A stretch of DNA of 64,000 nt from Ophelia neglecta (taxonomy: Eukaryota). The stretch is taken from positions 30,938,001-31,002,000 of the forward strand of contig OZ260662.1 of the NCBI GenBank assembly GCA_965285935.1, read 5' to 3'. Under the pieces are notes generated by a model. It made no database searches and was not told the DNA's origin. It was given only the letters and a program-made list of their open reading frames with translations. The position numbers and the translations under genes are program-made. The first letter of the stretch is position 1. Each line of letters begins with the position of its first letter. Below, piece after piece: positions 6,882-49,939 of the stretch.

Positions 6882-7170
6882 GTAAGCAACTGATACTTAT
6901 CTCACGATTAAAAAAAACTGAATAGAAATATTACACAAAAAGTTTTATCAGGATAGAGATTGGGTTGGGGATGTAGCACAAGGACCACATAGCACAATGG
7001 ATAGAGTCGCCGATATAGCTGGGCTAGGTGGTGGTACCGCAATGGGTGACAGATAAAGTGTTGAGGATAGTGATGTGCAATGAACATTGTAGTCAGTACA
7101 TGTAATGAGTGAGAAATTGCCAGTGACAGAACTAAGTTTGATCATCAACCGAAAACTACATGGCTGCTGA

Positions 7171-7364
7171 GTTTCACACCTAATAATGAACACTGGTTCA
7201 TGGTCACACAACATAAAAACATCTTCATATAATAATTGGATAACAATTAACACCTATTACGGTTCAGCAGGCAATGATGCAAAACATCAGTACCGGTGTG
7301 AGTAGTTTGATTTCACACCTTTGTGCCTGTAGTAATTTAATATTACCCATGTGCTTTCACACCT
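7171..7364 (+). promoter_or_regulatory. T-box site cluster upstream of array gene copy 1 (repeated with variants in every unit)
   Basis: TCACACCT at 7174, 7313 and 7357, TAACACCT at 7248, and GGTGTGA at 7295 (perfect AGGTGTGA in copies 2, 6, 7, 9). Interspersed TTTGAT motifs and a perfect TCF site ATCAAAG at 7599. CCAAT and TATA-like motifs lie between the cluster and the ATG. Confidence 0.55.
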
Positions 7365-7670
7365 TATCAGGCGTTGTGAGTGCCAAGACACATGAGTTGA
7401 GTGCTGTCCAATCACTGTAAGTGTTAAATACACTCCACTCAACTTATGCCTGATGGCTGGTGATACTAACACATATCTCGGTATATTAGGCTAGGAGTTA
7501 GAGAACTCCTTAGATCTGATCTTGAGCTAACCCACACTACAACCACACTACCACCATAAAGAGACAGAGAGAGAGAGAGAACCTGACTGCCTGAATTCAT
7601 CAAAGAGCTGTATATCTTTACATTTTTGCCTATCCCTGCAGAATTTCTAGATCATCATCATCCATTCACT

Positions 7671-8782
7671 ATGGACAAAGTTGTTCTTGGTCAGGAGACC
7701 TTTGCCCGCCAGAAAAAGAGAACCCCACAGGTGAACATTGTTGTATTATCAGACATAATTTTTACATAAATGTTCATAAGATTACTTAGCATATACTAAT
7801 TGTCATTTTATTCCAATATTTTCTCAATGAACGGGTAACCGAATAAACCTGTTAATATACTTTCTCATACAGAGTTAGTGGTGAGCTTCAAAGTTTGGCG
7901 ATACTCTCCTTAATTTTATTTCATTTTCATAATTTTTAATGATTACAATATTTTTTAAATTTATGATTAAATGTTGCATTTTAAAATCAAAACAAATATT
8001 CTCACACACCGTTTGTCTATTCTCAGGTTCTTTGGAGAAGGATTGGAACTTCTGTTTACCCTTGCCCTGCTGAGTGCCTGGAGAATTCCACTCATTCGGA
8101 CAACAGCATAGAGTTGTCTTCCGACTTCTACGACAGACTTCCGGACATCAGTCTAGAGATGAGCAGTGTTCACCGTGTTTGCCATAACATCACACGATGC
8201 TCGGATGACACCAGACTCTCGGACTATTCATCCCACATCAGGTTCAGTGGGAGTACCTACAGCAAGATACAGAGTCCCCAAACTTCCACCAGAACGGACC
8301 TCAGCCAGACCCCACCCAGTGCCTGTTGGTCGTCCATCCTGACATCTGGTGACTCCTGGGAGTACTGCCTACCCGAGGTGCCCCACAACAGCCCCGATGT
8401 CAGTCTAGAGTCCAGGATGACCCTGGTCCGCCCTGCTTGTCACACACGGTCATCTCTAGGCCCAAGGCCCCAGTGTGATGGACAAGAGTCAGAAGAACAC
8501 TCCCCGCCAAATGAGAGTTTCGACGGTGTGGACCCCCTAGACTCCGAGGAGGATCTTGGACTTTCGCTTCTGACTGCCTCATTGACCTCTACCCACACCC
8601 GGCTGCACACCACCGCTGACTCCGATGCCACCTTCTTCATGCATGCGCCTTTATCCCGGAAGGCAGTCACCAAGCAGGAAGCCCATAGTAAAAGGAAAAG
8701 GATTCTTACCAAGCTGAAGAAGTTTAAGCAGCACTTCAACAGTGTTGCTGGGGGCCAGATGCACACGTTAGCTGTCCTCTAG
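7671..8782 (+). CDS. Unknown-family array gene, copy 1 (exons 7671-7730, 8027-8782; 271 aa)
   Basis: MDKVVLGQETFARQKKRTPQ, then gtgaac...ttctcag, then VLWRRIGTSVYPCPAECLE in frame with ORF 8114-8782. Ends KRKRILTKLKKFKQHFNSVAGGQMHTLAVL. Confidence 0.8.
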
Positions 8783-9379
8783 GATGGAAAATAAGTGACA
8801 TGAATACCTGGAAAAACATGCCTGTGATAGAGACTGCTACAGCAAACATGCCCTTTAAACATTCCATGCAAACAGTGTTGGGGAAAGAGAACTTTAAAGA
8901 ATCTAGCATATGTTCTTTATTTATTTTTATTTTTTAATGTTACATTTGATATTTTAAATATTGGAGCCACGGAGGTGCCTATTATGGTTATATTTATGCA
9001 ATTGATAAGCCACCAATGCCTTTTAAGTCTACAAGACCTATTAGGAGCCTAACAAGTCAATGGATTGCTTCGTTTATTAATAAGTACTTTCCATTTATAT
9101 CATAATCATCCTGTTAGTCATTATGTAAATATGTAAATACGTTGAAAGACGTAAATAAATCATACTGTTATTAAACATGCTGAATTTCTTTTAAAGTCAA
9201 TGAAAAATTGGTTACAAAGTAAGTTTAAGTGCCGCGAGTTTCAATTTACTGAGAAGATATATTTCCTAATACGAGATTCAGTGGTTTGATATACGAAAAA
9301 TATAAAATCACACGATTTACCATAAGGCCACTCTGCACAACCTAAGTTGAAAAAGTGAGGTCAACAAGGTCTGCATTTT

Positions 9380-9381
<2 letters not shown>

Positions 9382-9457
<76 letters not shown>
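9382..9457. repeat. (TA)n microsatellite at the LINE 3' tail
   Basis: Directly visible, abutting the LINE 3' end. Confidence 0.9.
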
Positions 9458-12400
9458 GTCTTTATTTCCTCCTTGTCAGGAGCGTACTCCTAAGAGATAC
9501 ATAATAATAAACTAGTGCTGATAATTATAAAGAATATAAGTTACATCAGTAAGTCAAAATAATATTAACAATTGCAATAGATAATAGGTTCTTATAGGCA
9601 TAGTAGTTATATCTTGCAAAATAATTTACCTATTGTAGCAAAATACTTTACAATTTTCACAATCTCGAAAGTGCCTGCCTAAATTTTTCCAAATAATAAT
9701 ATTCCATTTCATAAAACGTTAATGGGTTTCTTCTGTGAAGGAACACTTGATAAATATCCTAAGATGTGTAGCACGAATTGTTCATCATCAAGAGTACATA
9801 AATAAACCTCGGTGTTAACTGGGAGAGTACAAATGGCAATGTCCCAGAAAACTTCCCTCTCCCCGCAATATTGTTCACACTGGCATAGTTTGTGAGTAAG
9901 AAGGTCCTAAAACTTAGAGTTACAAATATGGCATACTCCAATATCTCCACTTGGAATAGTATACAGTCTTGCAAAATCATAGGCTTGCCTGGCCATATCG
10001 GGTGCTGTCCGTAAATACTGCCAGACCTTGGAAGGAGACAGGATGTTTACTCCCTGTAAGTATGTCTCTTGGAGCTTTCTCAACCTAGACAGACTGTGGT
10101 CACACAACAATCCATCATGATTACTCTTAGCGCATTCAACAGACGCAACTGCGTTTGCAATTAAATTTGACCATTCACGTTTGTTAGGACATGTTCCTTG
10201 CTCAAGGTATTCTGTTATATACTGATAAAGGTCATACTTATGTAGCAAGTTTACACAATCTGAAACAAACCCGGACTGGACATGACCCGACGGCTGGAGC
10301 TTAAATGACCACAGACGTCTGAGAAATACCGCCTTGGCCACGCACTCAACAGGTAACTCACACAGTCTGCCCTTGAAATGTAGCTTTCGTGTGTCAATGT
10401 GCGCCATGGTCGAACACCATCCCAACATCCCGAAGGCTACGTCCGCCCTAGTCGCCTTGTGAAAACTCTGAATCATTTTAGCACAACACCGGTGGGCCGT
10501 TTCCAACTTACTTGCCCCTTCCTTTGTGAGCGAGTTCCATAGTTCACATCCATAGAGAGCGGAAGTTCTCACAGAAGATTTAAAGATTTTGGTCATAGTT
10601 ATTGGGGTTGCCCCCAACCGCATGTGACTGGCCATCAGACACCTGGACTTTGCACAGGCACGACGAACCTGCTCTCTGAGATTAAATTTGTCGTTTAATA
10701 ACACACCGACGTGGACCTCCTCTGAAACAACAGGAATCACCTCTTTATCCAAAGTAACACTGCCATTGGCACTTCGGCGACACACTTTATTTATTTCCAA
10801 AAACCATCACCCTAGATTTACTTGAGTTAAAAATTGTCCGCCACCTACAGGAATACTTCCAGGCGGTGTCGATCATTTTTGGAGTTGCCTTGGGCTACTT
10901 GCTAGGAGGACTATATCGTCCGCCTGAGTGGGACACCCAATATACGTGTCCCCCAGTGAAAGCCCTGATCCGGAAGTCTCCAGTTCTCTCAATATTGGGT
11001 CTATATAAGCTAAAAATTTCCATGGGCCCTAAACCGATCCTTGCATAACAGATTGTAACATCGGAAATGCTCTAGATTTCGCTCCGTCCACAAGTACTCT
11101 GCATGTCCTTCCTGTGTCAGAATTAAGCATCAGCTGCCACATTCTGCCTCTTATCCCCAACTCACGTAGACAAACAAATAGGCCCACATGCCAGACTGAG
11201 TCAAATGCTGAGGCTGAATCCAGCATACACATATACACTCTAGACCCTCCCTCTACATGGTGACGTATGCCTTATTGGATAATAAAGGAAACCATTAAAC
11301 TGTCTCGTTTCACCTGGCAGGCATTTTGCAAAGAATGAGAGAAATCTGGTTTGTACAGGCAGGCCCACTTCCTAAATCGCCCTAGTGTCAGTCTTTCACA
11401 CACCTTGAAAATTACTGGCGAGAGGGTCACACCCTTGTAATTCTTTCTGCTATCTTCGTGTTTCTTTGTCCCTTTGAAAATCGTCACCACCAATCCTAGC
11501 TTTATTAATTTTTGGGCACATAACTAAGTTTTATATATCAAGTTGAATAGCTATGTAAGTTTTAGCGTTAACAGGGCTCCTCCGTACTTAATGTGCTCAT
11601 TTTGAATGCTGTCAATACCGGGGACTTCCTTAGCTCGAGCAAACGCACAACCTCCATCACCTCGGCCGGGTTAATGGGTGCACCCATAATCTGATCTTGT
11701 TCTGTATGGGTCATCTCCTTTAGCTCACGGAAAACCTTCTCCATACATGCCTGGTGCTTGGTGTCAAAATACGAGTTGTCTAAAGGTTGATACATACGCT
11801 CAAAATGAGCGTGCCAAGCATTTAAAATGGCTCCTGGTTCCCTTAGTATTGTGTTGCCTACTTTCAATTCCGTCTTGGGTTGTGACTGTTTTTTATTCCT
11901 CTTAACCATACAGAAAAGTTTTTTTTCTGGTCGGTTTCTGCAGCTACCTCGATATCTTTTTTCGATTTCACTTTGAAGACCTCTCTCACACTGGCGCCTC
12001 AGACACCTGAACTTGCGCTTTTCAATTTTGTAATTTAAGTACGAAGGGTGTTCATTGCCCCTTGGCTTTCCCTCTCTCTCCCACTTTTCTCTGGCCACCC
12101 TCATTTTATTGTGTAGCTCAGAAAGCCCACTCCCTCGCCATTAAGGCGTCTTTGCACTGTTAAATTTTGAGGTAGGCACTGTACTTTCAGACCCACGGCT
12201 TAGTATGTCTAGCAAACGTTTATATTGAGTATCTAATTAGCAATTAGTGGTGATATCGTCACAGTCAGCAAGATCGCAGAGTCACGTGTTGTTCGTAGGT
12301 TCTCGATAGTTCTAATTTGGAGAGCCTGTCCCATGCATACCATTCTCCAGCGAATGATGATTGTTTAATTTGGAATGGCTTTGTATAAATGAATCCAGCA

Positions 12401-13011
12401 CTGGATTATGGTCACTACAGTGAGGGCCGCCTCTGTCAACACCTGCCTTGCGTTCAATAAACGAAAACGTTCGCAAACATCACAAACGTTTCGCGAAATT
12501 CCGTAACTGAACGGTTCGTTTGCCGAAAACGTTCGCAACCGATCGCAAACGTATTTGAAGGTGGTGCGCCAAGAAAACCAAAATGGCGGACGGGTGAGCA
12601 CATGTTCTGTTATCTTGTGGGCGGGGCCTAGTAGCAAACGTTCGCGATTCGTTCAATAAAGAGATGTGTATCGGAAACTGTGATAGGCCAACGTTTTTTT
12701 ATTGAACGTAAGGCTGGCATGACAACACAGTATCTAATTTTGACTTTTTTATTAGAATGTGGTCAATCAGACTCCTAAACTCGCCATGTGTTCCCTGATC
12801 AAAATAATAGCCTGGTCCTAAACACTTGTCAATAACCAACAAAGAGCAGAAATCGTTTCTGAGCGAGAACTGATTCAGGTGATAATCGCGAGCATTGTTA
12901 GGTCTAATAGTACAGCGATCTCCGTCTAACTGAGCATTACAATCTCCCATTAAAATCAGTTCACCAATGCTCACACATTTTAGGGCTAGTGTTTCTAGCT
13001 CTTGAAGGATG
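9457..13011 (-). mobile_element. 5'-truncated, frameshifted non-LTR retrotransposon (APE-RT ORF2; L2/CR1/RTE-X-like)
   Basis: APE C-terminal half (ELILMGDCNAQL, SLIDHIL), RT motifs (MLDSASAFDSVWHVGLF, SVMQGS, CPTQADDIVLL), LYGCELW and a C-terminal CHIC zinc-finger-like segment. The 3' end has AATAAA plus a simple-repeat tail. Confidence 0.9.
12446..12713. mobile_element. 268-bp MITE with 15-bp TIRs and 3-bp TSD (CTG)
   Basis: TIRs CCTTGCGTTCAATAA and TTATTGAACGTAAGG. CTG is duplicated at 12443-12445 and 12714-12716. The empty site ACACCTGGCATG is present in the paralogous LINE at about 46979-46990. Confidence 0.9.
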
Positions 13012-13720
13012 TCACACCATTTACCATAAGGCCACTCTGCACAACCTCGTTGAAAATGTGAGGTCAACAAGGTCTGCATATTGGATATAAATCGGAACTT
13101 ATATTGGCGCCATGGAAGATCCAAGATACGATCTCACAAATATAGATTTATTCATTGAAATCACTACATATAATTAGTGAGAAATTGCCAGTGACAGAAC
13201 TTAGTTTGATCATCACCCAAAAGACTTCATGGCTGCTGAGCTTTACACCTTTTGATGAACACTGGTCAAAAATAAACACTTATTAGGGCACAGCAGGCAA
13301 TGATGCAAATCACCGTTACAGGTGTGAGTAGTTTGATTTCACACCTTTGTGCCTGTAGTTTCTTAATGTAACCCATATGCTTTCACACCTTATCAGGCGC
13401 TGTGAGTGCCAAGAAACAAGAGTTGAGTGGCGTCCAATCACTGTAAGTGTTAAATACAATCCACTCAGCTTATGTCTGATTGCTGGTGAGACTAACACAT
13501 ATCTCGGTATAATAGGCTTGGACTTCGAGAAATCCTTAGATCTGATTTTGAGCTAACACACACTACACCACACTACAACCAAATAGAGAGATACTGAGAG
13601 AGATACTGAGGGAGAGAGAGAGTAAGAGAGGACCTGCCTGCCTGACTTCATCAAAGAGCTGTATATCTTTACATTTTGCATTTCCCTGTAGTACTTCTAA
13701 ATCATCATCATCCATTCACT

Positions 13721-14816
13721 ATGGACAGAGTTGTAGTTGATCAGGAGGCCCGCCAGAACAAGAGAACCCTAAAGGTGAATATTGTTATATTATCAGACAT
13801 ACTTATTTCATTAATATTGATAAGATTACTTAGCATATACTAATTGGCATTTTTTTTATTCCAATATTTTCTCAATAAACAGAAACCGAATAATCCTTAT
13901 TAATATACCTTCTCATACAGAGTTATCAGTGATCGGCGAGCTTTAATATTTGGCAATAACGTTACTCTCCTTAATATTTTTTTTTTAATTTTTGATAATT
14001 TTTTTTCAATATTTTTTAAATTTATGATTATATGTTGTATTTCAAAATGTATACAAATATTCTCACACACCGTTTGTCTATTCTCAGGTTCTTTGGAGAA
14101 GGATTGGAACTTCTGTTTACCCTTGCCCTGCTGAGTGCCTGGAGACTTCCACTCATTTGGACCACAGCATAGAGTTGTCTTCCGACTTCTACGACAGACA
14201 CCCGGAGACCAGTCAGGAGATGAGCAGTGTTCACCGTGTTTGTCATAACAACACACGATGCTCGGATGACACCGGACTCTCGGACTATTCATCCCACAGC
14301 AGGTTCAGTGGGAGTACCTGCAGCAAGTTACAGAGTCCCCAAACTTCCACTAGAACGGACCTCAGCCAGACCCCACCCAGTGTCTGTTGGTCGTCCACCC
14401 GGACATCTAGTGACTCCAGGGAGTACTGCCTACCCGAGGTGCCCCACAACAGCCCTGATGTCAGCCTAGAGTACAGAGAGCGGTCATCTCTAGGCCCTAG
14501 GCCCCAGTGTGATGGACAAGAGTCAGAAGAACCCTCCCGGCTAACTGAGAGCTTCGACGCCATGGATCCCCTGGACTCCGAGGAGGATCCTGGCCTTTCC
14601 CTTCTCACTGCCTCATTGACCTCTTCTCACAACCGGCTGCACACCACCGCTGACTCCGATGCCACATTCTTCATGCATGCGCCTTTATCCCGGAAGGCAG
14701 TCACCAAGAAGGAAGCCCATACCAAGAGAAAAAAGATTCTTACCAAGCTGAAGAAGTTTAAGCAGCATCTCAACAGTGTTGCTGCCGACCAGATGCACAC
14801 GTTAGCTGTCCTCTAG
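13721..14816 (+). CDS. Array gene copy 2 (exons 13721-13774, 14088-14816; 260 aa)
   Basis: Same splice sites as copy 1, open frame, C-terminus MHTLAVL. Confidence 0.8.
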
Positions 14817-15181: not shown

Positions 15182-15329
15182 TCATACTGCTATTAAACAT
15201 GCTGTTTTTCATTTAACGTCAATTTAAAATTGGTTACAAAGTAAGTTTACGTGCCGAGTTACAATTAACTGGGAGTGTATACTTCTTTATACGAGATTAA
15301 GTGGTTTAATACACGTACAATATCAAATC

Positions 15330-17060: not shown

Positions 17061-18391
17061 GCGTAACTCTGAAAAGTGATGGATATTGAACATTGAAGTT
17101 ACTACATGTAATGAGTGAGAAATTGCCAGTGACAGAACTTAGTTTGATCATCACCCAAAAGACTTCATGGCTGCTGAGTTTCACACCTTTTGATGAACAC
17201 TGGTCAACAATTTAACACCTATTACGGCTATGCAGGCAATGATGCAAAACACCGTTACTAGGGTGAGTAGTTTGATTTCACATCTTTGTACCTGTAGTTA
17301 CTTAATATGCCTATATGCTTTCACACCTCATCATGCGTTGTTAGAGCCAGGAAACAAGAGTTGAGTGGTGTCCAATAACTGTAAGTGCTAAATACAATCC
17401 ACTCAACTTATGTCTGATGACTGGTGAGACTAACACATACCTCGGTATAATAGGCTAGGAGTTGGAGAAATCCTTAGATCTGATTTTGAGCTTACCCACA
17501 CTACACCACAATACAACCAGAAAGAGAGATACTGAGAGAGATACTGAGAGAGAGAGTAAGAGAGGACCTGCCTGCCTGACTTCATCTAAGAGCTGTATAT
17601 CTCTACATTTTGCATTTCCTTGTAGTTCTTCTAAATCATCATCATCATCCATTCACTATGGACAGAGTTGTACTTGGTCAGGAGGCCTTTGACCGCCAGA
17701 ACAAGAGAACCCCAAAGGTGAATATTGTTATATTATCAGACATACTTATTACATAAATATTAATAAGATTACTTAGCATATACTAATTGCCATTTTTTAT
17801 TCCAATATTTTCTCAATAAACAGAAACCGAATAATCCTTATTCATATACCTTCTCATACAGAGTTATCAGTGAGTGGTGAGCTTCAATATTTGGCGATAA
17901 CGTTACTCTCCTTTATATCTTTTGTTAATTTTGGATAATTTCAATATTATTTAAATTTATGATTATATGTTGTATTTCAAAATGTAAACAAATATTCTCA
18001 CACACCGTTTGTCTATTCTCAGGTTCTTTGGAGAAGGATTGGAACTTCTGTTTACCCTTGCCCTGCTGAGTGCCTGGAGACTTCCACTCATTCGGATCAC
18101 AGCATAGAGTTGTCTTCCGACTTCTACGACAGACTTCCGGACATCAGTCTAGAGATGAGCAGTGTTCACCGTGTTTATCATAACAACACACGATGCTTAG
18201 ATGACACCGGACTCTCGGTCTCCTCATCCCACGGCAGCTTCAGTAGGACTACCTGCAGCAAGCTTCAGAGTCCTCAAACTTCCACTAAAACGGACCTCAG
18301 CCAGACCCCACCCAGTGTCTGTTGGTCGTCCATCCGGACATCCGGTGACTCCTGGGAGCACTGCCTACCCGAGGTGCCCCCCAACAGCCCT

Positions 18392-18634
18392 TGTTCCGGC
18401 GAAAGTTTAACACTAAACAAGAAATGTCACGACTAATGTTACCTCTATATTTCTAAGTTTATTTCCTGCTCATAATCATCCATGGCAAACAAAACAAGTA
18501 CCAAACTCAACCTGAAGGCCTTGACCTTCTTCCATTCAATAACAAGTTGCAGCACACCTGGTGGTCACTGACTGAACTTAAAGCTAAAAGTGTCCTACTA
18601 CTTAAACTAGGCAATTTAACCAGTCTGCACAACA
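18392..18634 (-). repeat. 3' LTR of the BEL/Pao element
   Basis: TGTTCCGGCG...GCACAACA, identical by eye to 24864-25106. Adjacent polypurine tract AGAAAGGGGAGGA on the minus strand at 18635-18647. Confidence 0.95.
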
Positions 18635-18888
18635 TCCTCCCCTTTCTGATATGAAATATCAACTAAATTTAACTAAAAGTTCATAATACTTATGCATGTC
18701 CGCATAGCTTCTAATGGAAATAAGATATTCCAAATCGAACTGTCTGTGTATCCAACTGAACTTTACGATATAAATTATATGTTTTACTGAATGATATCTT
18801 CGAAAAGGCGTCATATTGATTATCCTGTGAGCAGATTCTCGTAAATCTTTAAGATGAAATTATTGACTAAATTTAATGTATCTGCTTG

Positions 18889-24726: not shown

Positions 24727-24848
24727 TTTCCTAATGGAAATTTCCACAGTTAAAGCAGCCTCAACACAATGTAGACAGAAAATACTTGATCACAAAGTTC
24801 CTCCAAATTCCACCACAAAATCCATGAAACACAACAATAACCACGTTG

Positions 24849-24859
24849 CTCTGCTACCA
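24849..24859 (-). other. Primer binding site TGGTAGCAGAG (initiator tRNA-Met)
   Basis: Complementary to the 3' end CTCTGCTACCA of animal tRNA-iMet, 4 nt inside the 5' LTR. Confidence 0.8.
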
Positions 24860-24863
24860 GCAA

Positions 24864-25106
24864 TGTTCCGGCGAAAGTTTAACACTAAACAAGAAATGTC
24901 ACGACTAATGTTACCTCTATATTTCTAAGTTTATTTCCTGCTCATAATCATCCATGGCAAACAAAACAAGTACCAAACTCAACCTGAAGGCCTTGACCTT
25001 CTTCCATTCAATAACAAGTTGCAGCACACCTGGTGGTCACTGACTGAACTTAAAGCTAAAAGTGTCCTACTACTTAAACTAGGCAATTTAACCAGTCTGC
25101 ACAACA
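24864..25106 (-). repeat. 5' LTR of the BEL/Pao element
   Basis: 243 bp, identical by eye to 18392-18634, adjacent to the PBS. Confidence 0.95.
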
Positions 25107-35648: not shown

Positions 35649-38492
35649 GATGGAAAATAAGTGACATGAATACCTGCAAAACATGTCAGTGATATAGACT
35701 GTTAGAGCAAGCATGCCCCGTAAACACTCCATGCTAACAGTGTTAGGGAAAGAGACCTTTAAAGAATTCTTTTTATTGATTGCTTCATTAATGTTACCTT
35801 TGATATTTGAAATATTGGAGCGACGGAGGTGCCTGTTATGGTTATATTTATACATTTTATAAGCCACCTATGCCTTTTAAGTCTACAAGACCTTTAGGAG
35901 CTAACAAGTTAATTGATTGCTCCATTCATTAATAAGTGCGTTTCATTTATATCATAGTCATCCTGTTAGTCATTATGTAAATATGTAAATATGTTGAAAG
36001 TTGTAAATAAATCATACTGCTATTAAACATGCTGTTTTTCATTTAACGTAAATTTAAAATTGGTTACAAAGTAAGTTTACGTGCCGAGTTACAATTAACT
36101 GGGAGTGTATACTTCTTTATACGAGATTAAGTGGTTTAATACACGTACAATATCAAATCACACAATTTACCTAGTGGTCATTCTGCACAACTGATGCTCA
36201 AAAAATGAGGGCAACAAGGTGTGCATATTGGATGTAAAACGGGATTGGTATTGGCGCCAGGGAAGATCCAAGATGCGATCTCAAAAATTTAGATTTATCC
36301 CCAGGTTTTCAGGTTTGTATTCCCAAATTCCGCACATAGAAGGAAGTTCAGCCTTTAGACAGGTTTTACACCATAGACGACAGCATGTATAGGTTCACAG
36401 ATTTCTATTAGATAAGAAATCGATTGTCCGTCAGTTTATAATAGCCAGAAATAGTTTATTTCGATTTTTCCTTGTTTCTCGGTATATTTCTACAAAAAGT
36501 TGTCCTGCAGAAAATAGTTTACCTCGTTAGATTACATGTTTTTGTGGAAGTTTATTGTATTATTCTATTTTTTTTTGACCTTTTAGCCATTACTGACTCC
36601 CATTGTCCGCCCTCCCGTTCACTGGGCGCGATGATCAACTCTGTTGGCGGTTCATCCCTTCGAGGGCTGGTGGGCCATTCATTGTCAATGGGATTGTGTA
36701 GGTCTACATGACGGGCGTCTTGGTGACCATCATACAGTGGTCTTTGGACATGGTGGCTTTTGAATTTTGTCCCGTCCGTTATTGTCGCGGTTGTCCGAAA
36801 TACGCCATCTGTTAGTATGGTAGTAGCTGCTTGGGCTTTTCCACTGTTTGTTCATGTGCAGAATATTGATATTTTTTTAATAGTTCCATTTGTATGTTGG
36901 TAGCTATCGCCGATCAATTTGAGTAATCTTTTGTTTTCATCCTCGAGGGTTTTATTTTCTGCTGCATCTTCCTTGACTGATTTTCAAATTTCATTCTCAA
37001 AGCTTCAAGTCTGTCATTTGTTTGTTGTTATTCTGTAACGGTGGTTCCGATAAATTCGATAAGGCGGATGGACAGGTCTAAAGCTGCTTTACCTGTTAGC
37101 CCTTTGATATCTTTGTTGCTCATTAGATTAGTTTGTTCATCTTTTCACTGAGTGAAGAATAATCTTGGGAACTAATTTTTATTTCTGACACTTACATGAA
37201 TAGTTCGACCACATATTCAACCAGTACATCTATTTTCCTGCGCTCTTTTGGAATTTTTATTTAATCTTTTGTATATTGAGGGCTTTACAGATTTTTTCGA
37301 ATTGTTCAATGGCTTCCTTTGCCAGAGTGTTTCATGTATCCCGCATAACCTCTTCGTCAAAGTCTTGTTTTATTTCCGCGATTACACCCATTTAGAGGAA
37401 TTCTCTAGTTTTTTGCTTTATTCTAGCTTCTATGCCGGGTATTTCCACGGAAAATATAGTTCGTCTGCTCCTTTTGAGAGTCCCAGATATTTCGGGATAT
37501 TTCTGTGATCATTTCGATGCCAGAATAGTACGGTAGATGCATTTTGTCGTCCGCTTTTGGGTGCTAGACTCCTCAGTTGTACTGCTTCTGGATCCTCGGC
37601 GGGCCTGGGCGCTTTCACACCTTTTTGGTTGACAGGTCCAGCCGCGGTTTTACAGTAATCAACCTAGTTTAAATAACTTTTCAGTGTGCGATAAAGTGGT
37701 ATTAGAATATTTTTTTCCGGTAGAAACTTCAGATAAACCTATGTGCGATCATCCTTCAAGGATGGCAAGAGGTCTCCGTGTTCCGTGTACCTTCTGTCGG
37801 GTTCCGTGTGGGTGGACCTGCTGCATCTCAGGGATTTAACAGTAGATTTTCTCACAGAGCCGCTGTGGATACACGTATCACCAAGTCAACGCGTAACTCT
37901 GAAAAGTGATGTGTATTGAACATTGAAGTCACTACATGTAATGAGTGAGAAATTGCCAGTGACAGAACTTAGTTTGATCATCACCCAAAAGACTTCATGG
38001 CTGCTGAGTTTCACACCTTTTGATGAACACTGGTCAAAAATAAACACTTATTAGGGCACAGCAGGCAATGATGCAAAACACCGTTACAGGTGTGAGTAGT
38101 TTGATTTCACACCTTTGTGCCTGTAGTTTCTTAATGTAACCCATATGCTTTCACACCTTATCAGGCGCTGTGAGTGCCAAGAAACAAGAGTTGAGTGGCG
38201 TCCAATCACTGTAAGTGTTAAATACAATCCACTCAGCTTATGTCTGATTGCTGGTGAGACTAACACATATCTCGGTATAATAGGCTTGGACTTCGAGAAA
38301 TCCTTAGATCTGATTTTGAGCTAACACACACTACACCACACTACAACCAAATAGAGAGATACTGAGAGAGATACTGAGGGAGAGAGAGAGAGAGTAAGAG
38401 AGGACCTGCCTGCCTGACTTCATCAAAGAGCTGTATATCTTTACATTATGCATTTCCCTGTAGTACTTCTAAATCATCATCATCCATTCACT

Positions 38493-39588
38493 ATGGACAG
38501 AGTTGTAGTTGGTCAGGAGGCCCGCCTGAACAAGAGAACCCCAAAGGTGAATATTGTTATATTATCAGACATACTTATTTCATTAATATTGATAAGATTA
38601 CTTAGCATATACTAATTGGCATTTTTTTTATTCCAATATTTTCTCAATAAACAGAAACCGAATAATCCTTATTAATATACATTCTCATACAGAGTTATCA
38701 GTGAGTGGCGAGCTTTAATATTTGGCAATAACGTTACTCTCCTTAATATTTTTTTTTTAATTTTTGATAATTTTTTTTCAATATTTTTTAAATTTATGAT
38801 TATATGTTGTATTTCAAAATGTATACAAATATTCTCACACACCGTTTGTCTATTCTCAGGTTCTTTGGAGAAGGATTGGAACTTCTGTTTACCCTTGCCC
38901 TGCTGAGTGCCTGGAGACTTCCACTCATTTGGACCACAGCATAGAGTTGTCTTCCGACTTCTACGACAGACACCCGGAGACCAGTCTGGAGATGAGCAGT
39001 GTTCACCGTGTTTGTCATAACAACACACGATGCTCGGATGACACCGGACTCTCGGACTATTTATCCCACAGCAGGTTCAGTGGGAGTACCTGCAGCAAGT
39101 TACAGAGTCCCCAAACTTCCACTAGAACGGACCTCAGCCAGACCCCACCCAGTGTCTGTTGGTCGTCCACCCGGACATCTAGTGACTCCAGGGAGTACTG
39201 CCTACCCGAGGTGCCCCACAACAGCCCTGATGTCAGCCTAGAGTACAAACAGCGGTCATCTCTAGGCCCTAGGCCCCAGTGTGATGGACAAGAGTCAGAA
39301 GAACACTCCCGGCTAACTGATAGCTTCGACGCCATGGATCCCCTGGACTCCGAGGAGGATCCTGGCCTTTCCCTTCTCACTGCCTCATGGACCTATTCTC
39401 ACACCCGGCTGCACACCACCGCTGACTCCGATGCCACATTCTTCATGCATGCGCCTTTATCCCGGAAAACAGTCACCAAGAAGGAAGCCCATAACAAGAG
39501 AAAAAAGATTCTTACCAAGCTGAAGAAGTTTAAGCAGCATCTCAACAGTGTTGCTGCCGGCCAGATGCACACGTTAGCTGTCCTCTAG
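38493..39588 (+). CDS. Array gene copy 7 (exons 38493-38546, 38860-39588; 260 aa)
   Basis: Splice sites conserved, open frame. Confidence 0.8.
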
Positions 39589-42430: not shown

Positions 42431-43512
42431 ATGGACAGAGTTGTAGTTGGTCAGGAGGCACGCCAGAACAAGAGAACCCCAAAGGTGAATATTGTGGTAT
42501 TACCAGACATACTTATTACATAAATATTAATAAGATTACTTAGCATATACTAATTGGCATTTTTTTATTCCAATATTTTCTCAATTAACAGTAAACGAAT
42601 AAATCCTGTTAATATAACTTTTCATAAGGTGTTATCAGTGAGTGGTGAACTTCAATATTTGGCGATACTCTCCTTAATATTTTTTTTTGACTTTTTTTAT
42701 TATTTCAATATTTTTTAAATTATGATTATATGTTGCATTTTGAATTGTAAACACATTCTCACACACCTTTTGTCTATACTCAGGTTGTTTGGAGAAGGAT
42801 TGGAACTTCTGTTTACCCTTGCCCTGCTGAGTGCCTGGAGACGTCCACTCATTCGTATCACAGCATAGAGTTGTCTTCCGACTTCTACGACAGACACCCG
42901 GAGACCAGTCTGGAGATGAGCAGTGTTCACCGTGTTTGTCATAACAACACACGATGCCCGGATGACACCGGACTCTCGGACTCCTCATCCCACAGCAGCT
43001 TAAGGAGGACTACCTGCAGCAAGTTACAGAGTCCCCAAACTTCCACCAGAACGGACCTCAGCCAGACCCCACCCAGTGCCTGTTGGTCGTCCATCCTGAC
43101 ATCCGGTGACTCCTGGGAGCACTGCCTACCCGAGGTGCCCCACAACAGTCCTGATGTCAGACTAGAGTCCAGAGGACGGTCATCTCTAGGCCCTAGGCCC
43201 CAGTGTGATGGACAAGAGTCAGAAGAACACTTCCGGGCAAGTGAGAGCTTCGACGCCATGGACCCCGTGGACTCCGAGGAGGACCCTGGCCTTTCCCTTC
43301 TCACTGCCTCATGGACCTCTTCTCACACCCGGCTGCACACCACCGCTGACTCCGATGCCACCTTCTTCATGCATGCGCCTTTATCCCGGAAGGCAGTCAC
43401 CAAGAAGGAAGCCCATAACAAGAGGAAAAAGATTCTTTCCAAGCTAAAGAAGTTTAAGCAGCATCTCAACAGTGTTGCTGGGGGCCAGATGCACACGTTA
43501 GCTGTCCTCTAG
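42431..43512 (+). CDS. Array gene copy 8 (exons 42431-42484, 42784-43512; 260 aa)
   Basis: Splice sites conserved, open frame. Confidence 0.8.
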
Positions 43513-44025
43513 GATGGAAAATAAGTGACATGAATACCTGCAAAAACATGCCTGTGACAGAGACTGCTACAGCAAACATGCCCTTTAAACATTCCATGCA
43601 AACAGTGTTAGGGAAAGAGACCTTTTAAGAATCTAGCATATTTTTTTTATCGATTGTTTTTTTTAATGTTACCTTTGATATTTTAAATATTGGAGCCACG
43701 GAGGTGCCTATTATGGTTATTTTTATGCATCTGATAAGCCACCAATGCCTTTTAAGTCTACAAGACCTATTAGGAGCCTAACAAGTCAATGGATTGCTTC
43801 GTTTATTAATAAGTACTTTCCATTAATATCATAATCATCCTGTTAGTCATTATGTAAATATGTAAATACGTGTAAAGGTGTAAATAAATCATACTGTTAT
43901 TAAACATTCTGTTTTTCATTTAATGTCAATTAAAAATTGGTTACAAAGTAAGTTTCAGTGCCGCGAGTTTCAATTTACCGAGAAGATATATTTCCTAATA
44001 CGAGATTCAGTGGATTAATATACGA

Positions 44026-47000
44026 TATGTATGTCTTTATTTCCTCCTTGTCAGGAGCGTACTCCTAAGAGAAACATAATAATAAACCAGTGCTGATAAT
44101 TATAAAGAATATAAGTTACATCAGTAAGTCAAAATAATATTAACAATTGCAATATATAATAGATTCTTATAGGCATAGTAGTTATATCTTGCAAAATAAT
44201 TTACCTATTGTAGCAAAATACTTTACAATTTTCGCAATCTCGAAAGTGCCTGCCTAAATTTTTCCAAATAATAATATTCCATTTCATAAAACGTTAATGG
44301 GTTTCTTCTGTGAAGGAAGACACACTTGGTAAATATCCTAAGATGTGTAGCACGAATTGTTCATCATCAAGAGTACATAAATAAACCTCGGTGTTAACTG
44401 GGAGAGTACAAATGGCAATGTCCCAGAAAACTTCCCTCTCCCCGCAATATTGATCACACTGGCATAGTTTGTGAGTAAGAAGGTCATAAAACTTAGAGTT
44501 ACAAATATGGCATACTCCACTATCTCCACTTGGAATAGTATACAGTCTTGCAAAATCATAGGCTTGCCTGGCCATATCGGGTGCTGTCCGTAAATACTGC
44601 CAGACCTTGGAAGGAGACAGGATGTTTACTCCCTGTAAGTATGTCTCTTGGAGCTTTCTCAACCTAGACAGACTGTGGTCACACAATCCATCATGATTAC
44701 TCTTAGCGCATTCAACAGACGCAACTGCGTTTGCAATTAAATTTGACCATTCACGTTTGTTAGGACATGTTCCTTGCTCAAGGTATTCTGTTATATACTG
44801 ATAAAGGTCATACTTATGTAGCAAGTTTACACAATCTGGAACAAACCCGGACTGGACATGACCCGACGGCTGGAGCTTAAATGACCACAGACGTCTGAGA
44901 AATACCGCCTTGGCCACGCACTCAACAGTAACTCACACAGTCTGCCCATGAAACGTAGCTTTCGTGTGTCAATGTACGCCATGGTGGACCACCATCCCAA
45001 CATCCCCAAGGCCACGTCCGTCCTAGTCGCCTTGTGAAAACTCTGAATCATTTTAGCACAACACGGCTGGGCCGTTTCCAGCATACTTGCCCCTTCCTTT
45101 GTGAGCGAGTTCCATAGTTCACATCCATTGAGCGCGGAAGTTCTCACAGAAGATTTAAAGATTTTGGTCATAGTGACTGGCCATCAGACACCCTGGACTT
45201 TGCACAGGCACGACGAACCTGCTCTCTGAGATTAAATTTGTCGTTTAATAACACACAGACGTGGACCTCCTCTGAAACAACAGGAATCACCTCTTTATCC
45301 AAAGTAACACTGCCAGTGGCACTTCGGCGACACACTTTATTTCCAAAAACCATCACCCTAGATTTACTTGAGTTAAAAATTGTCCGCCACCTACTTGATA
45401 CTTCCAGGCGATGTCGATCATTTTTGGACTTGCCTCGGGCTACTTGCTAGGAGGACTATATCGTCCGCCTGAGTGGGACACCCAATATACATGTCCCCCA
45501 GTGAAAGCCCTGATCCGGAAGTCTCCAGTTCTCTCAATAATGATTCTATATAAGCTAAATATTTCCATGGGCCCTAAGCCGATCCTTGCATAACAGATTG
45601 TAACATCGGAAATGCTCTAGATTTCGCTCCGTCCACAATTACTCTGCATGTCCTTCCTGTGTATGAATTAAGCATCAGCTGCAACATTCTGCCTCTTATC
45701 CCCAACTCATGTAGACAAACAAATAGGCCCACATGCCAGACTGAGTCAAATGCTGTGGCTGAATCCAGCATACACATATATACTCTAGACCCTCCCTCTA
45801 CATGGTGACGTATGCCTTCTTGGATAATAAAGGAAACCATTAAACTGTCTCGTTTCACCTGGCAGGCATTTTGCAAAGAATGAGGGTAATCTGGTTTGTA
45901 CAGGCAGGCCCACTTCCTAAATCGTCCTAGTGTCAGTCTTTCCCACACATTGAAAATTACTGGCAAGAGGGTCACACCCCTGGGATTCTTTCTGCTATCT
46001 TCGTGTTTAGTTGTCCCTTTGAAAATCGTCACCACCAATCCTAGCTTTATTAATTTTTGGGCACATAACTAAGTTTTATATATCAAGTTGAATAGCTATG
46101 TACGTTTTAGCCTTAACAGGGCTCCTCCGTACTTAATGTGCTCATTTTGAATGCTGTCAATGCCGGAGACTTCCTTAGCTCGAGCAAACGCACAACCTCC
46201 GTCACCTCGGCCGGGTTAATGGGTGCACCCATAATCTGATCTTGTTCTGTATGGGTCATCTCCTTTAGCTCACGGAAAACCTTCTCCATACATGCCTGGT
46301 GCTTGGTGTTAAAATACGAGTTGTCTAAAGGTTGATACATACGCTCAAAATGAGCGTGCCAAGCATTTAAAATGGCTCCTGGTTCCCTTAGTATTGTGTT
46401 GCTTACTTTCAATTCCGTCATGGGTTGTGACTGTTTTTATTCCTCTTAACCATACAGAAAAGTTTTTTCTGGTCGGTTTCTGCAGCTACCTCGATATCTT
46501 TTTTCGATTTCACTTTGAAGACCTCTCTCACACTGGCGCCTCAGACACCTGAACTTGCGCTTTTCATTTTTGTAATTTAAGTACGAAGGGTGTGCATTAC
46601 CCCTTGGCTTTCCCTCTCTCTCCCACTTTTCTCTGGCCACCCTCATTTTATTGTGTAGCTCAGAAAGCCCACTCCCTCGCCATTAAGGCGTCTTTGCACT
46701 CTCAAATTTTGAGGTAGGCACTACTTTCAGACCCACGGCTTAGTATGTCAAGCAAAGGTTTATATTGAGTATCTAATTGGCAATTAGTGGTGATATCGTC
46801 ACAGTCAGCAAGATCGCAGAGTCACGTGTTGTTCGTAGGTTCTCGATAGTTCTAATTTGGAGAGCCTGTCCCATGCATACCATTCTCCAGCGAATGATGA
46901 TTGTTTAATTTGGAATGGCTTTGTATAAATGATTCCAGCACTGGATTATGGTCACTACAGTGAGGGCCGCCTCTGACAACACCTGGCATGACAACACAGT

Positions 47001-47280
47001 ATCTAATTTTGACTTTTTTAATAGAATGTGGTCAATCAGACTCCTAAACTCGCCACGTGTTCCCTGATCAAAATAATAGCCTGGTCCTAAACACTTGCCA
47101 ATAACCAACAAAGAGCAGAAATCTTTTCTGAGCGAGAACTGATTCAGGTGATAATCGCGAGCGTTGTTAGGTCTAATAGTACAGCGATCTCCGTCTAACT
47201 GAGCATTACAATCTCCCATTAAAATCAGTTCACCAATGCTCACACATTTTGCGGCTAGTGTTTCTAGCTCTTGAAGGATG
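44026..47280 (-). mobile_element. Second copy of the 5'-truncated LINE (without the MITE)
   Basis: Near-identical to 9457-13011, with the same truncation junction (GAAGGATG|TCACACCATTTACC) and shared disablements. Confidence 0.9.
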
Positions 47281-47988
47281 TCACACCATTTACCATAAGG
47301 CCACTCTGCACAACCTCGTTGAAAATGTGAGGTCATCAACGTCTGCATATTGGATATAAATCGGAACTTATATTGGCGCCATGGAAGATCCTAGATACGA
47401 TCTCACAAATATAGATTTATTCATTGAAATCACTACATTTAATTAGTGAGAAATTGCCAGTGACAGAACTTAGTTTGATCATCACTTCAAGACTTCATGG
47501 CTGCTGAGCTTCACACCTTTTGATGAACACTGGTCAAAAATAAACACTTATTAGGGCACAGCAGGCCATGATGCAAAACACCGTTACAGGTGTGAGTAGT
47601 TTGATTTCACACCTTTGTGCCTGTAGTTTCTTAATGTAACCCATATGCTTTCACACCTTATCAGGCGCTGTGAGTGCCAAGAAACAAGAGTTGAGTGGCG
47701 TCCAATCACTGTAAGTGTTAAATACAATCCACTCAACTTATGTCTGATTGCTGGTGAGACTAACACATATCTCGGTATAATAGGCTTGGACTTCGAGAAA
47801 TCCTTAGATCTGATTTTGAGCTAACCCACACTACACCACACTACAACCAAAGAGAGAGATACTGAGAGAGATACCGAGGGAGAGAGAGAGTAAGAGAGGA
47901 CCTGCCTGCCTGACTTCATCAAAGAGCTGTATATCTTTACATTTTGCATTTCCCTGTAGTACTTCTAAATAATCATCATCTATTCACT

Positions 47989-49111
47989 ATGGACAGAGTT
48001 GTAGTTGGTCAGGAGGCCCGCCAGAACAAGAGAACCCCAAAGGTGAATATTGTTATATTATCAGACATACTTATTTCATTAATATTGATAAGATTACTTA
48101 GCATATACTAATTGGCATTTTTTTAATTCCAATATTTTCTCAATAAACAGAAACCGAATAATCCTTATTAATATACCTTCTCATACAGAGTTATCAGTGA
48201 GTGGCGAGCTTTAATATTTGACAATAACGTTACTCTCCTTTATATTTTTGTTTTAATTTTTGATAATTTTTTTTTCAATATTTTTTAAATTTATGATTAT
48301 ATGTTGTATTTCAAAATGTTAACAAATATTCTCACACACCTTTGTCTATTCTCAGGTTCTTTGGAGAAGGATTGGAACTTCTGTTTACCCTTGCCATGCT
48401 GAGTGCCTGGAGACTTCCACTCATTTGGACCACAGCATAGAGTTGTCTTCCGACTTCTACGACAGACACCCGGAGACCAGTCTGGAGATGAGCAGTGTTC
48501 ACCGTGTTTGTCATAACAACACACGATGCTCGGATGAAACCGGACTCTCGGATTCCTCATCCCACAGCAGCTTCAGTAGGACTGCCTACAGCAAGCTTCA
48601 GAGTCCCCAAACTTCCACTAGAACGGAGCTTAGCCAGACCCCACCCAGTGTCTGTAGGTCGTCCATCCGGACATCTGGTGACTCCTGGGAGCACTGCCTA
48701 CCCGAGGTGCCCCACAACAGCCCTGATGTCAGTCTAGAGTCCAGGATGACCCTGGTCCGCCCTGCTTGTCACACACGGTCATCTCTAGGCCCTAGGCCCC
48801 AGTGTGATGGACAAGAGTCAGAAGAACACTCCCGGCTAACTGAGAGCTTCGACGCCATGGATCCCCTGGACTCCGAGGAGGATCCTGGCCTTTCCCTTCT
48901 CACTGCCTCATTGACCTCTTCTCACACCCGGCTGAACACCACCGCTGACTCCGATGCCACCTTCTTCATGCATGCGTTTTTATCCCGGAAGGCAGTCACC
49001 AAGAAGGAAGCCCATAACAAGAGGAAAAAGATTCTTTCCAAGTTAAAGAAGTTTAAGCAGCATCTCAACAGTGTTACTGCCGGCCAAATGCACACGTTAG
49101 CTGTCCTCTAG
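47989..49111 (+). CDS. Array gene copy 9 (exons 47989-48042, 48356-49111; 269 aa)
   Basis: Splice sites conserved, open frame. Confidence 0.8.
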
Positions 49112-49939
49112 GATGGAAAATAAGTGACATAGATACCTGCAAAAACATGCCTGTGATAGAGACTGCTACAGCAAACATGCCCCGTAAACATTCCATGTTA
49201 GGAAAAGAGACCTTTTAAGAATTCTTTTTATTGTTTGCTTTATTAATGTTACCTTTGATATTTGAAATATTGGAGCGACGGAGGTGCCTGTTATGGTTAT
49301 ATTTATGCATTTGATAAGCTACCAATGCTTTTAAATAAATTGCTCCATTTATTAATAAGTGCGTTTCATTTATATCATAGTCATCCTGTTAGTCATTATG
49401 TAAATATGTAAATATGTTGAAAGTTGTAAATAAATCATACTGCTATGGAACATGTCGTTTTTCATTTAATGTCAATTTAAAATTGGTTACAAATTAAGTT
49501 CCAGTGCCGAGTTACAATTTACCGAGAATGTTTACTTCGATTGTCCATCGGTTTAAAATAGTCGAACATTGTTTATTTCGATTTTGTCTTGTTTTTCGGA
49601 ATATTTCTACAAAAAAGTTTTCCTGCCGAAAATAGTTTACCTCGTTAGATATCATGTTTTTGTGGAAGTTAATTGTGTTTTTCTGTTTAACTGCAAAGGA
49701 GTGATACTCAAATATTAAAAACTTATTATTAATTTAACTCTTATTGTATTATGTTTTAATTGTGACAATAAGCAGTTATATATATATGCATTTTACTTCT
49801 ATGATAAATAGTGGGGTGCTTCCGGACGCCCTAAGTACTCCCGATATACAACGATAGTCATTAATCTAAATTTACTATTTACAAACCAAAATCACTCACT
49901 GGTACCAGCAATTTCGATAATATTGAACTGCCTAGTTTA

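What the first reader, a model, noticed from the sequence alone, without database searches (positions are those of the whole stretch)
7068..49686. Nine-copy tandem array of an orphan two-exon gene (main candidate for an undescribed system)
Seen: nine same-strand copies, each with a short ATG exon missed by the ORF track (MD[RK]VV[LV][GD]QE...KRT[PL][KQ]), an intron of about 300 bp and a long exon. The product has a conserved VLWRRIGTSVYPCP block, a Ser/Thr/Asp/Glu-rich, probably disordered middle, HTTADSDATFFMHAPL, a basic amphipathic helix KRKKILTKLKKFKQHLN and a conserved C-terminus MHTLAVL. I recognise no domain. Coding indels among the intact copies are multiples of three (6, 27 and 3 bp) and I saw no premature stops, while neighbouring TE-derived sequence is full of stops and frameshifts. 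That contrast argues for selection on the protein. Inference: a compact gene, high dosage, T-box/TCF motifs upstream and Pumilio elements downstream fit a lineage-specific, transiently and strongly expressed early embryonic regulator.
Basis: partly seen in the sequence, partly recalled or inferred. Interest (0 to 1): 0.85.

Follow-up and report, generated by a model that had tools for sequence, protein, structure and literature searches.

The report
Tandem array of orphan disordered-protein genes
Nine head-to-tail copies of a real but undescribed two-exon gene for a floppy, probably nuclear protein lie on a marine invertebrate chromosome, each behind a cluster of T-box binding sites; relatives exist in a few other organisms, but expression and function are untested.

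Summary
The array is real. Nine same-strand copies of a 3.95-kb unit fill 7069-49688. Each has a 54/60-nt ATG exon, a GT..AG intron of about 300 bp in phase 0, and a roughly 750-nt second exon. Seven copies are intact. Copy 3 is split by a BEL/Pao LTR element with identical LTRs. Copy 5 lost its C-terminus and 3'UTR through a roughly 950-bp deletion.

The gene is not an orphan in the strict sense. The genome has a 67%-identical paralogue on C7 and a 35%-identical one on C9. Three metagenome-derived eukaryotic contigs or proteins carry relatives. The first exon (M-[DE]-R-[VI]-V-[LI]-G) and the intron position recur in two of the distant relatives.

No Pfam, PDB or atlas match was found. AlphaFold2 predicts disorder apart from one C-terminal helix. 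dN/dS is about 0.5, and dS matches intron divergence.

Promoters carry 2-4 exact T-box half-sites plus a CCAAT and a TATA box. Exact T-box sites also occur upstream of the C9 gene and of the foreign homologue. The TCF claim is not supported. UGUAAAUA clusters precede the poly(A) signal.

One invariant block fits the tankyrase-binding motif; this is a lead, and the one complex prediction gave no verdict. No RNA data exist, so embryonic expression remains untested.

The parts
7069..49688 (+). Whole tandem array: nine units of about 3.95 kb (gene of about 2.3 kb plus a spacer of about 1.65 kb), interrupted by transposon insertions
   Evidence: Self-BLAST; whole-genome search
7671..8782 (+). Copy 1, intact and the most diverged (edge copy): exon 1 at 7671-7730, intron 7731-8026, exon 2 at 8027-8782
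13721..14816 (+). Copy 2, intact: exon 1 at 13721-13774, exon 2 at 14088-14816
17658..25471 (+). Copy 3, disrupted: exon 1 at 17658-17717; exon 2 at 18023-18391 and about 25110-25471, split by an LTR element
18392..25109 (-). BEL/Pao LTR retrotransposon inside copy 3: identical 246-nt LTRs (18392-18637 and 24864-25109) and an open 1952-aa gag-pol frame (18889-24747)
28311..29403 (+). Copy 4, intact: exon 1 at 28311-28370, exon 2 at 28678-29403
31543..32616 (+). Copy 5, C-terminally damaged: exon 1 at 31543-31602, exon 2 at 31909-32616. A deletion of about 950 bp at about 32580 removes the last ~18 codons, the UGUAAAUA cluster and the poly(A) signal
34526..35648 (+). Copy 6, intact (reference copy): exon 1 at 34526-34579, exon 2 at 34893-35648
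38493..39588 (+). Copy 7, intact: exon 1 at 38493-38546, exon 2 at 38860-39588
42431..43512 (+). Copy 8, intact: exon 1 at 42431-42484, exon 2 at 42784-43512
47989..49111 (+). Copy 9, intact: exon 1 at 47989-48042, exon 2 at 48356-49111
34048..34322 (+). Promoter of copy 6, the same layout in every copy: T-box half-sites at 34048(+), 34125(-), 34144(+) and 34188(+), CCAAT box at 34237, TATA-like GGTATAATAGGC at 34311
35976..36011 (+). 3'UTR end of copy 6: three UGUAAAUA elements (35976, 35984, 36002), the last overlapping AATAAA at 36006. The same arrangement is present in 8 of 9 copies
35331..35354 (+). Codons for RPQCDGQE (exon-2 residues 147-154), the invariant block that fits the tankyrase-binding-motif rules
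9450..13012 (-). LINE-like element (reverse-transcriptase fragments with stops) between copies 1 and 2
44025..47280 (-). Second copy of the same LINE-like element between copies 8 and 9 (97.5% identical over the aligned part)

Best explanation
This is a tandemly amplified branch of a taxon-restricted, undescribed gene family. Each gene makes a protein of about 270 aa that is intrinsically disordered apart from one basic amphipathic C-terminal helix. Its KRKK stretch looks like a nuclear localisation signal by eye (not tested), so it is probably nuclear. The protein probably works through short linear motifs, not a fold. These motifs are the conserved N-terminus M-[DE]-R-[VI]-V-[LI]-G, an R-x-x-[C/P]-x-G-x-[E/S] block, the invariant DSDATFFM block, the helix, and the C-terminal TLA[VI][LV]. 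Transcription starts from a TATA/CCAAT promoter that is most likely driven directly by a T-box factor, through 2-4 exact half-sites 340-500 bp upstream of the ATG. A UGUAAAUA cluster next to the poly(A) signal suggests control of the mRNA by Pumilio or CFIm. Amplification to seven working copies, homogenised by unequal exchange or gene conversion, raises dosage for a T-box-dependent burst of expression. Shown: the anatomy, family membership, constraint and motif clusters. Inferred: T-box control, nuclear adaptor function and the dosage rationale.
For: Copies of the gene occur only in this array plus two paralogues. The promoter is found only in the array and the C7 paralogue, so it is not a dispersed repeat. 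Exon 1 followed by GTAAAT is conserved in the 35%-identical C9 paralogue (L016:5085-5144) and in the foreign contig L013 (1785-1847), with exon 2 starting at the equivalent place. Homologues were found: P0001/L013 (E=4e-5 with a single sequence), L018/P0002 and P0003. dN/dS is about 0.5 and dN is below the intron and 3'UTR rate. All coding indels are multiples of three. AlphaFold2 gives mean pLDDT 45.7, with the only element being helix 216-240 at pLDDT 70-90. T-box half-sites number 34 against 2.2 expected. They are kept in the C7 paralogue promoter together with the CCAAT and TATA boxes. Exact sites lie at -265 (C9) and -307 (L013). The genome encodes at least 8 T-box loci. UGUAAAUA clusters occur in the 3'UTRs of the array, C7 and C9 genes.
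Against: There is no RNA evidence at all, so splicing, expression stage and level are unproven. Constraint is only moderate (dN/dS 0.5) and the third-position excess is weak (32/39/52 variable sites). Two of the nine copies are already broken. The nine promoters are copies of one ancestor, so their T-box sites count as one event. The independent support is one exact site in each of two distant promoters (roughly p=0.03 each). UGUA elements next to AAUAAA are also ordinary CFIm sites. No partner protein is shown.
Confidence: 0.6

Rival explanations
1. The conserved R-x-x-[C/P]-x-G-x-[E/S] block is a true tankyrase-binding motif. The family would then be tankyrase substrates or adaptors, poly(ADP-ribosyl)ated and turned over, or bringing tankyrase to a partner held by the C-terminal module. 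This is a refinement of the best explanation, not an alternative to it.
For: The array and C7 genes have RPQCDGQE, C9 has RPQCIGQE and L013/P0001 has RPPCIGAE. Each fits the published rules at every position: R1 and G6 essential; G/P/A/C at position 4; D>E with I allowed at position 5; no P at position 7; D/E at position 8 (PMC6082341; alignments). P0002 and P0003 keep RGQPSGAS followed by [ED]SE. The block lies in predicted disorder. The genome has a canonical tankyrase with its ARC clusters in one 685-aa exon (L024).
Against: This is a short degenerate motif that I picked out after trying many motif classes by eye. Position 5 is S in one lineage, and MAFFT does not align that block. No binding evidence exists; the single complex prediction gave no verdict (see Tried and rejected).
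Confidence: 0.25
2. The array is an evolutionarily young, largely neutral amplification. The copies are drifting duplicates of the C7/C9-type gene that are not individually needed, and the array is on its way to decay.
For: Two of nine copies are broken by a very recent LTR insertion and a deletion. dN/dS is only 0.5, and some near-identical pairs have a ratio above 1 on tiny counts (c2-c7). Codon-position bias is weak. No RNA evidence exists.
Against: Seven copies keep a 250-codon frame, both splice sites, the ATG exon, the promoter boxes and the poly(A) region at 7-17% nucleotide divergence. All indels are in frame. dN is significantly below dS, both between old copies and against the C7 paralogue.
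Confidence: 0.12
3. It is a fast-evolving germline or reproductive gene family (maternal mRNA regulated by Pumilio), amplified through genetic conflict or dosage demands in gametes, and not a zygotic T-box target.
For: Two or three UGUAAAUA elements are conserved in the 3'UTRs of the array, C7 and C9 genes. The protein evolves fast and is disordered, and tandem amplification with gene conversion is typical of such genes.
Against: UGUA next to AAUAAA is also the generic CFIm context. The foreign homologue L013 has no such element. The T-box cluster is the stronger and more widely conserved signal.
Confidence: 0.12
4. It is a transposon-borne or transposon-captured accessory ORF, or a very diverged member of a known family such as a Ripply-type T-box cofactor.
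For: The spacer of the unit contains dispersed repeat fragments, and LINE and LTR elements lie within the array. T-box-driven small disordered proteins such as Ripply exist (own knowledge).
Against: The gene and its promoter occur only in the array and at two single-copy paralogues, with no terminal repeats. There are no transposon domains. No WRPW or FPVQ motif is conserved: WRRI occurs only in the array and C7 branch. Pfam, PDB and atlas searches found nothing.
Confidence: 0.04

Closest known systems
Tandem multi-copy early regulatory genes (sea urchin pmar1 cluster, mouse Zscan4/Dux/Obox, Xenopus Bix/Mix T-box targets); named from my own knowledge, not tested here
   Same: A compact gene is repeated head to tail with its own promoter. 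The promoter is packed with sites for one developmental transcription factor, and the copies are homogenised by exchange.
   Different: Those genes encode DNA-binding proteins (homeodomain, zinc finger) and their expression is documented. This protein has no recognisable domain, is predicted to be disordered, and its expression is unknown.
Ripply family (small T-box-regulated cofactors of T-box proteins)
   Same: Both are small, largely disordered proteins built from short conserved motifs. The gene sits behind T-box sites, so a feedback role is conceivable.
   Different: Neither defining motif is conserved. WRPW is absent: WRRI occurs in the array branch only, and the kin have SVWTAG or SLWTTG. 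There is no FPVQ or Ripply homology block. There is no sequence similarity.
Tankyrase-binding-motif proteins (AXIN, 3BP2, TRF1 and others)
   Same: An 8-residue block in a disordered region obeys the R-x-x-[G/P/A/C]-[D/E/I]-G-[not P]-[D/E] rules and is kept in distant homologues.
   Different: This is a motif-level resemblance only. There is no homology to any known binder and binding is untested.
Lineage-specific tandem gene expansions noted elsewhere in this same genome by the scan (BTB-Kelch, SUEL-CUB-sushi, PAN-discoidin and mini-mucin arrays)
   Same: The genomic habit is the same: tandem arrays of taxon-restricted genes without RNA support.
   Different: Those encode domain-bearing, mostly surface or secreted proteins. 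This one is an intracellular-looking disordered protein with a distinctive T-box promoter.

Membership tests
Any Pfam / PDB / ESM-Atlas family | Significant profile or sequence match | tested here: not met
   In Pfam the best hit is CPG4 at E=0.11, below the cut-off, and the paralogues and homologues have no real hit. PDB profile searches gave 0 hits at E<=10. Atlas scores of 0.76-0.84 are within the noise range. The 1.84-billion-protein HMMER scan found only one unnamed relative.
Ripply | WRPW Groucho-binding motif | tested here: not met
   The array has VLWRRIG, C9 has TSVWTAG and L013 has TSLWTTG. WRPW is absent everywhere.
Ripply | C-terminal Ripply homology (FPVQ) block | tested here: not met
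   The C-terminal conserved block is DSDATFFM..P followed by a basic helix and TLAVL. There is no FPVQ.
Tankyrase-binding-motif proteins | Octapeptide with R at position 1, G at 6, a small residue at 4, D/E (or I/V/Q/Y/C) at 5, no P at 7 and preferably D/E at 8 | tested here: met
   RPQCDGQE, RPQCIGQE and RPPCIGAE fit fully, and RGQPSGAS fits at positions 1, 4, 6 and 7. The rules come from PMC6082341.
Tankyrase-binding-motif proteins | Physical binding to a tankyrase ARC | tested here: inconclusive
   One complex prediction with the genome's own ARC4 returned 'no answer', which is evidence neither for nor against. A binding assay is needed.
Direct T-box target genes | Clustered T-box half-sites (TCACACCT) in the proximal promoter | tested here: met
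   There are 2-4 exact sites per promoter in the 620 bp upstream of the ATG, where 0.03 per kb is expected. They are also present in the C7, C9 and L013 promoters.
Direct T-box target genes | Occupancy by, and dependence on, a T-box factor | not testable with these tools
   No ChIP, reporter or expression data are available. The genome has at least 8 T-box loci.
Pumilio-regulated mRNAs | UGUANAUA elements in the 3'UTR | tested here: met
   There are 2-3 elements per 3'UTR in 8 of 9 copies and in the C7 and C9 genes, but none in L013. This is ambiguous, because the same sequence fits CFIm UGUA elements next to the poly(A) signal.
Transposon accessory ORF | Dispersed copies with terminal repeats or transposon domains | tested here: not met
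   There are 12 protein matches in the genome, all in the array plus two single loci. The promoter is unique to the array and C7. No transposon domains were found.
Protein-coding gene under selection | dN/dS below 1, in-frame indels and a conserved intron position | tested here: met
   pN/pS is 0.44-0.64 with p of 1e-2 to 1e-4 in 5 of 6 comparisons. Indels are 3, 6 and 27 bp. Exon 1 and the splice donor are conserved in C9 and L013.

The most novel reading that the evidence does not exclude
The family is an undescribed, probably spiralian- or annelid-restricted class of T-box-driven signalling adaptors. Its disordered body presents a tankyrase-binding motif, and its invariant DSDATFFM-helix-TLAVL module holds a second partner. 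The nine-copy array would give a burst of this adaptor at a T-box-dependent step of early development, as a functional analogue of feedback regulators such as Ripply or of Wnt-pathway tankyrase clients.
Probability: 0.12. Interest if true: 0.7.

Novelty: new member of a known kind. Interest (0 to 1): 0.45.

Why it matters
Taxon-restricted, disordered proteins are the least understood part of invertebrate gene sets. This one has unusually clear handles for experiments:
- a clean two-exon model;
- a promoter whose only obvious input is a T-box factor, a feature that recurs in a distant paralogue and in another organism;
- an invariant C-terminal module;
- a motif that fits tankyrase recognition.

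If the gene is expressed as predicted, it would be a tractable direct T-box target and a test case for why some regulators are amplified in tandem. If it is not expressed, it is one more lineage-specific expansion in a genome that has many.

Tried and rejected
- **Homology searches.** Pfam, PDB-sequence and ESM-Atlas searches of exon 2, the paralogues and the family profiles found nothing usable. The Atlas lead 'ARHGEF33' at 0.84 is within the noise range.
- **Word-indexed protein searches.** The single-sequence search found nothing. The profile searches found only P0001, P0002 and P0003, all unnamed.
- **RNA evidence.** No RNA run holds the locus. The three holders of kind '?' are DNA contigs from one sample. 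They cover the spacers, and the only joint they show is one tandem-period joint, which is not a splice joint.
- **Complex prediction.** Own-genome tankyrase ARC4 against residues 130-174 of copy 6 gave no verdict (score 0.14 against a mark of 0.34, controls not run). I do not use this for or against binding.
- **Finding tankyrase.** The first two PARP loci I looked at proved to be PARP1 and PARP2.
- **Synteny.** The NAPRT exon next to the foreign homologue L013 is not within 10 kb either side of the C9 paralogue.
- **TCF sites.** They are at background density.
- **Motif classes checked by eye and rejected.** PIP box, FFAT, LIR, beta-TrCP degron (no G), GoLoco, WH2, eh1 (invariant Pro at position 6), PKI-type pseudosubstrate (basic residues not conserved), RVxF/SILK, and class I PDZ ligand.
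- **Literature.** A full-text search for DSDATFF or ADSDATF gave no paper.
- Exons were searched apart, by reference.


Full report
**Where and what**

The window is G000:C2:30938001-31002000 of a 762-Mb invertebrate genome. Other agents of the scan call it probably an annelid or marine worm. I did not test that.

**Observation**

Stop-to-stop frames on the + strand show the long exon nine times. Self-BLAST shows that the gene part (7069-9386 in copy 1) recurs at 13153, 17075, 27725, 30952, 33942, 37905, 41847 and 47422.

- The full repeat unit is about 3.95 kb, with 33942-37905 as reference.
- Copies 2, 6 and 7 are about 97% identical over the whole unit.
- Edge copy 1 is only 83-85% identical to the others. 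This is the pattern expected from homogenisation by unequal exchange.

Every copy has an ATG exon of 60 or 54 nt (MD[KR]VV[LV][GD]QE..KRT[PL][KQ]) followed by GTGAA. Every copy also has the acceptor ..tctattctcag|GTT in phase 0. Introns are 296-313 bp. A six-frame search of the whole genome finds all array copies inside this window.

**State of the copies**

- Seven copies are intact.
- Copy 3 is split at 18392 by a BEL/Pao element. The element has a Pao peptidase, reverse transcriptase and integrase, an open 1952-aa frame and identical 246-nt LTRs, so the insertion is very recent.
- Copy 5 carries a deletion of about 950 bp that replaces the last ~18 codons and removes the 3'UTR.
- LINE-like reverse-transcriptase remnants lie between copies 1/2 and 8/9.
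- Part of the spacer is a dispersed repeat. The promoter is found only in the array and at one paralogue.

**Is it a gene?**

- Coding indels are 6, 27 and 3 bp.
- Within the array, mean dN is 0.055 and mean dS is 0.110 (ratio 0.50).
- Against the C7 paralogue, dN is 0.18-0.20 and dS is 0.31-0.40.
- Intron divergence (0.099) and 3'UTR divergence (0.108) equal dS.
- pN/pS is 0.44-0.64, with Fisher p from 1e-2 to 1e-4 in five of six comparisons.
- Constraint is moderate. The third-position excess is weak, at 32/39/52 variable sites.

The strongest support comes from relatives.

- A paralogue on C7 (67% identity) has the same exon 1, intron and promoter.
- A paralogue on C9 (35% identity) and the metagenome contig L013 (protein P0001, the only hit among 1.84 billion representatives, E=4e-5) each have a short upstream exon: MERVVLGQESSCRQDKTASK|GTAAAT and MERIVIGGECTGQRLPATSSK|GTAAAT. 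In both, exon 2 starts at the equivalent S-x-W-x-x-G position.
- A further lineage (L018 = P0002, and P0003) shares the C-terminal module.

Blocks invariant or nearly so across the lineages are S-[IVL]-[ED]-L-S-x-x-x-Y-D, L-P-x-P-x-N-[ST]-P, L-G-x-R-P-x-C-x-G-x-E, T-T-[AV]-D-S-D-A-T-F-F-M-x-x-P-L, a basic stretch K-x-K-x-I...K-F, and a TLA[VI][LV] carboxy-terminus.

As required, the exons were searched separately by reference. The joined protein was not built or searched.

**What the protein looks like**

- There is no Pfam, PDB or Atlas relative.
- AlphaFold2 on the ten-row alignment gives mean pLDDT 45.7. The only element is helix 216-240, at pLDDT 70-90.
- Composition is Ser/Thr/Leu/Pro/Asp-rich.
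- By eye I see no signal peptide or membrane segment; this was not tested with a predictor.
- The helix has a 4-3-4-3 hydrophobic seam (I226, L230, F233, L/F237, V240). It is preceded by KRKK, which looks like a nuclear localisation signal by eye (inference).

The L-G-x-R-P-x-C-x-G-x-E block fits the published tankyrase-binding rules at every position in three lineages: RPQCDGQE, RPQCIGQE and RPPCIGAE. In the fourth lineage, RGQPSGAS fits at the two essential positions, 1 and 6, and also at positions 4 and 7. The genome has a canonical tankyrase (L024). This is a lead only. The one complex prediction allowed gave no verdict.

**Regulatory anatomy**

- TCACACCT occurs 34 times in the window against 2.2 expected, and 32 of the 34 lie in the array.
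- Each promoter has 2-4 exact sites between -340 and -500. These are followed by an invariant CCAAT box and a TATA-like GGTATAATAGGC about 215 nt before the ATG.
- Because the nine promoters are copies, they count as one ancestral cluster.
- Independent support: the C7 promoter keeps two exact sites and two one-mismatch sites.
- The C9 promoter has an exact site at -265 amid several near-sites. L013, from another organism, has one at -307, about 150 nt upstream of a TATA box.
- L018 has CCAAT, then a near-site (TTCCACACCT), then TATAAAG.
- The genome encodes at least 8 T-box loci, none of them linked to the array.
There is only one ATCAAAG, in the 5'UTR of five copies, which is background density.
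- In the 3'UTRs, 2-3 UGUAAAUA elements lie within 35 nt of the AATAAA. This holds in eight copies, in C7 and in C9, but not in L013. They fit Pumilio elements, but they fit CFIm UGUA elements equally well.

**Expression**

Nothing can be said. No RNA run holds the locus. The three holders are short-read DNA contigs from one sample (the runs carry the coded ids X1-X3). They cover the introns and spacers and show only a tandem-period joint.

**Verdict**

This is a real, selectively maintained, undescribed family with a T-box-type promoter. It is not strictly an orphan, it has no TCF cluster, and the embryonic role is untested.

In kind, it is a lineage-specific tandem expansion, of which this genome has many. 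What sets it apart is the conserved promoter logic and the motif-built disordered protein.

Noticed in passing
window 18392-25109: BEL/Pao LTR retrotransposon with 100% identical 246-nt LTRs and an uninterrupted 1952-aa gag-pol frame, inserted in exon 2 of copy 3. It looks like a very recent insertion.
   Followed up: partly
window 9450-13012 and 44025-47280: Two copies of one LINE-like element (reverse-transcriptase fragments with stops). They are 97.5% identical and sit at the same position of the spacer after copies 1 and 8, although those two gene copies are only about 85% identical. This points to a higher-order duplication or to conversion within the array.
   Followed up: partly
window 2477-3037 (- strand): A 186-aa open frame with a sub-threshold tetraspanin match (E=2.6e-7, 31.0 bits against a cut-off of 32.1). 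It is probably an exon of a neighbouring tetraspanin gene to the left of the array.
   Followed up: no
window 60213-60759: A 42-bp tandem repeat of 13 copies, 81% matching, open on both strands. On the + strand it reads as VVSGTDVVIVDVGT-like repeats within a 241-aa frame at 60149-60871. It is possibly a repetitive coding exon.
   Followed up: no
window 56208-56425: A 39/78-bp tandem repeat of 5.6 or 2.8 copies, AT-rich.
   Followed up: no
window 36530-37025 (spacer of the unit): A stretch of about 370-490 bp within the spacer has copies at 79-85% identity on C1, C7, C8 and C12. It is a small dispersed repeat carried along with each unit.
   Followed up: partly
L024 (G000:C2:62103000-62112999): The genome's tankyrase gene. 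Most of the ankyrin repeat clusters lie in one 685-aa open frame (6394-8448) and SAM plus PARP lie in a 339-aa frame (8718-9734). That is unusually few introns for this gene.
   Followed up: partly
L013 2047-3330: The foreign homologue P0001 carries an internal expansion of about 8 repeats of an FTLGKY(Y/P)TSEDD-like unit between the R-P-P-C-I-G block and the DSDATFFM block. The disordered linker is therefore free to vary in length.
   Followed up: no
window 39822 -> 35916 (run X2): One DNA contig joins 39822 back to 35916, a step of 3907 bp, which is one repeat period. This is the tandem junction, or a copy-number variant, seen in short-read data from what is probably the source sample.
   Followed up: no
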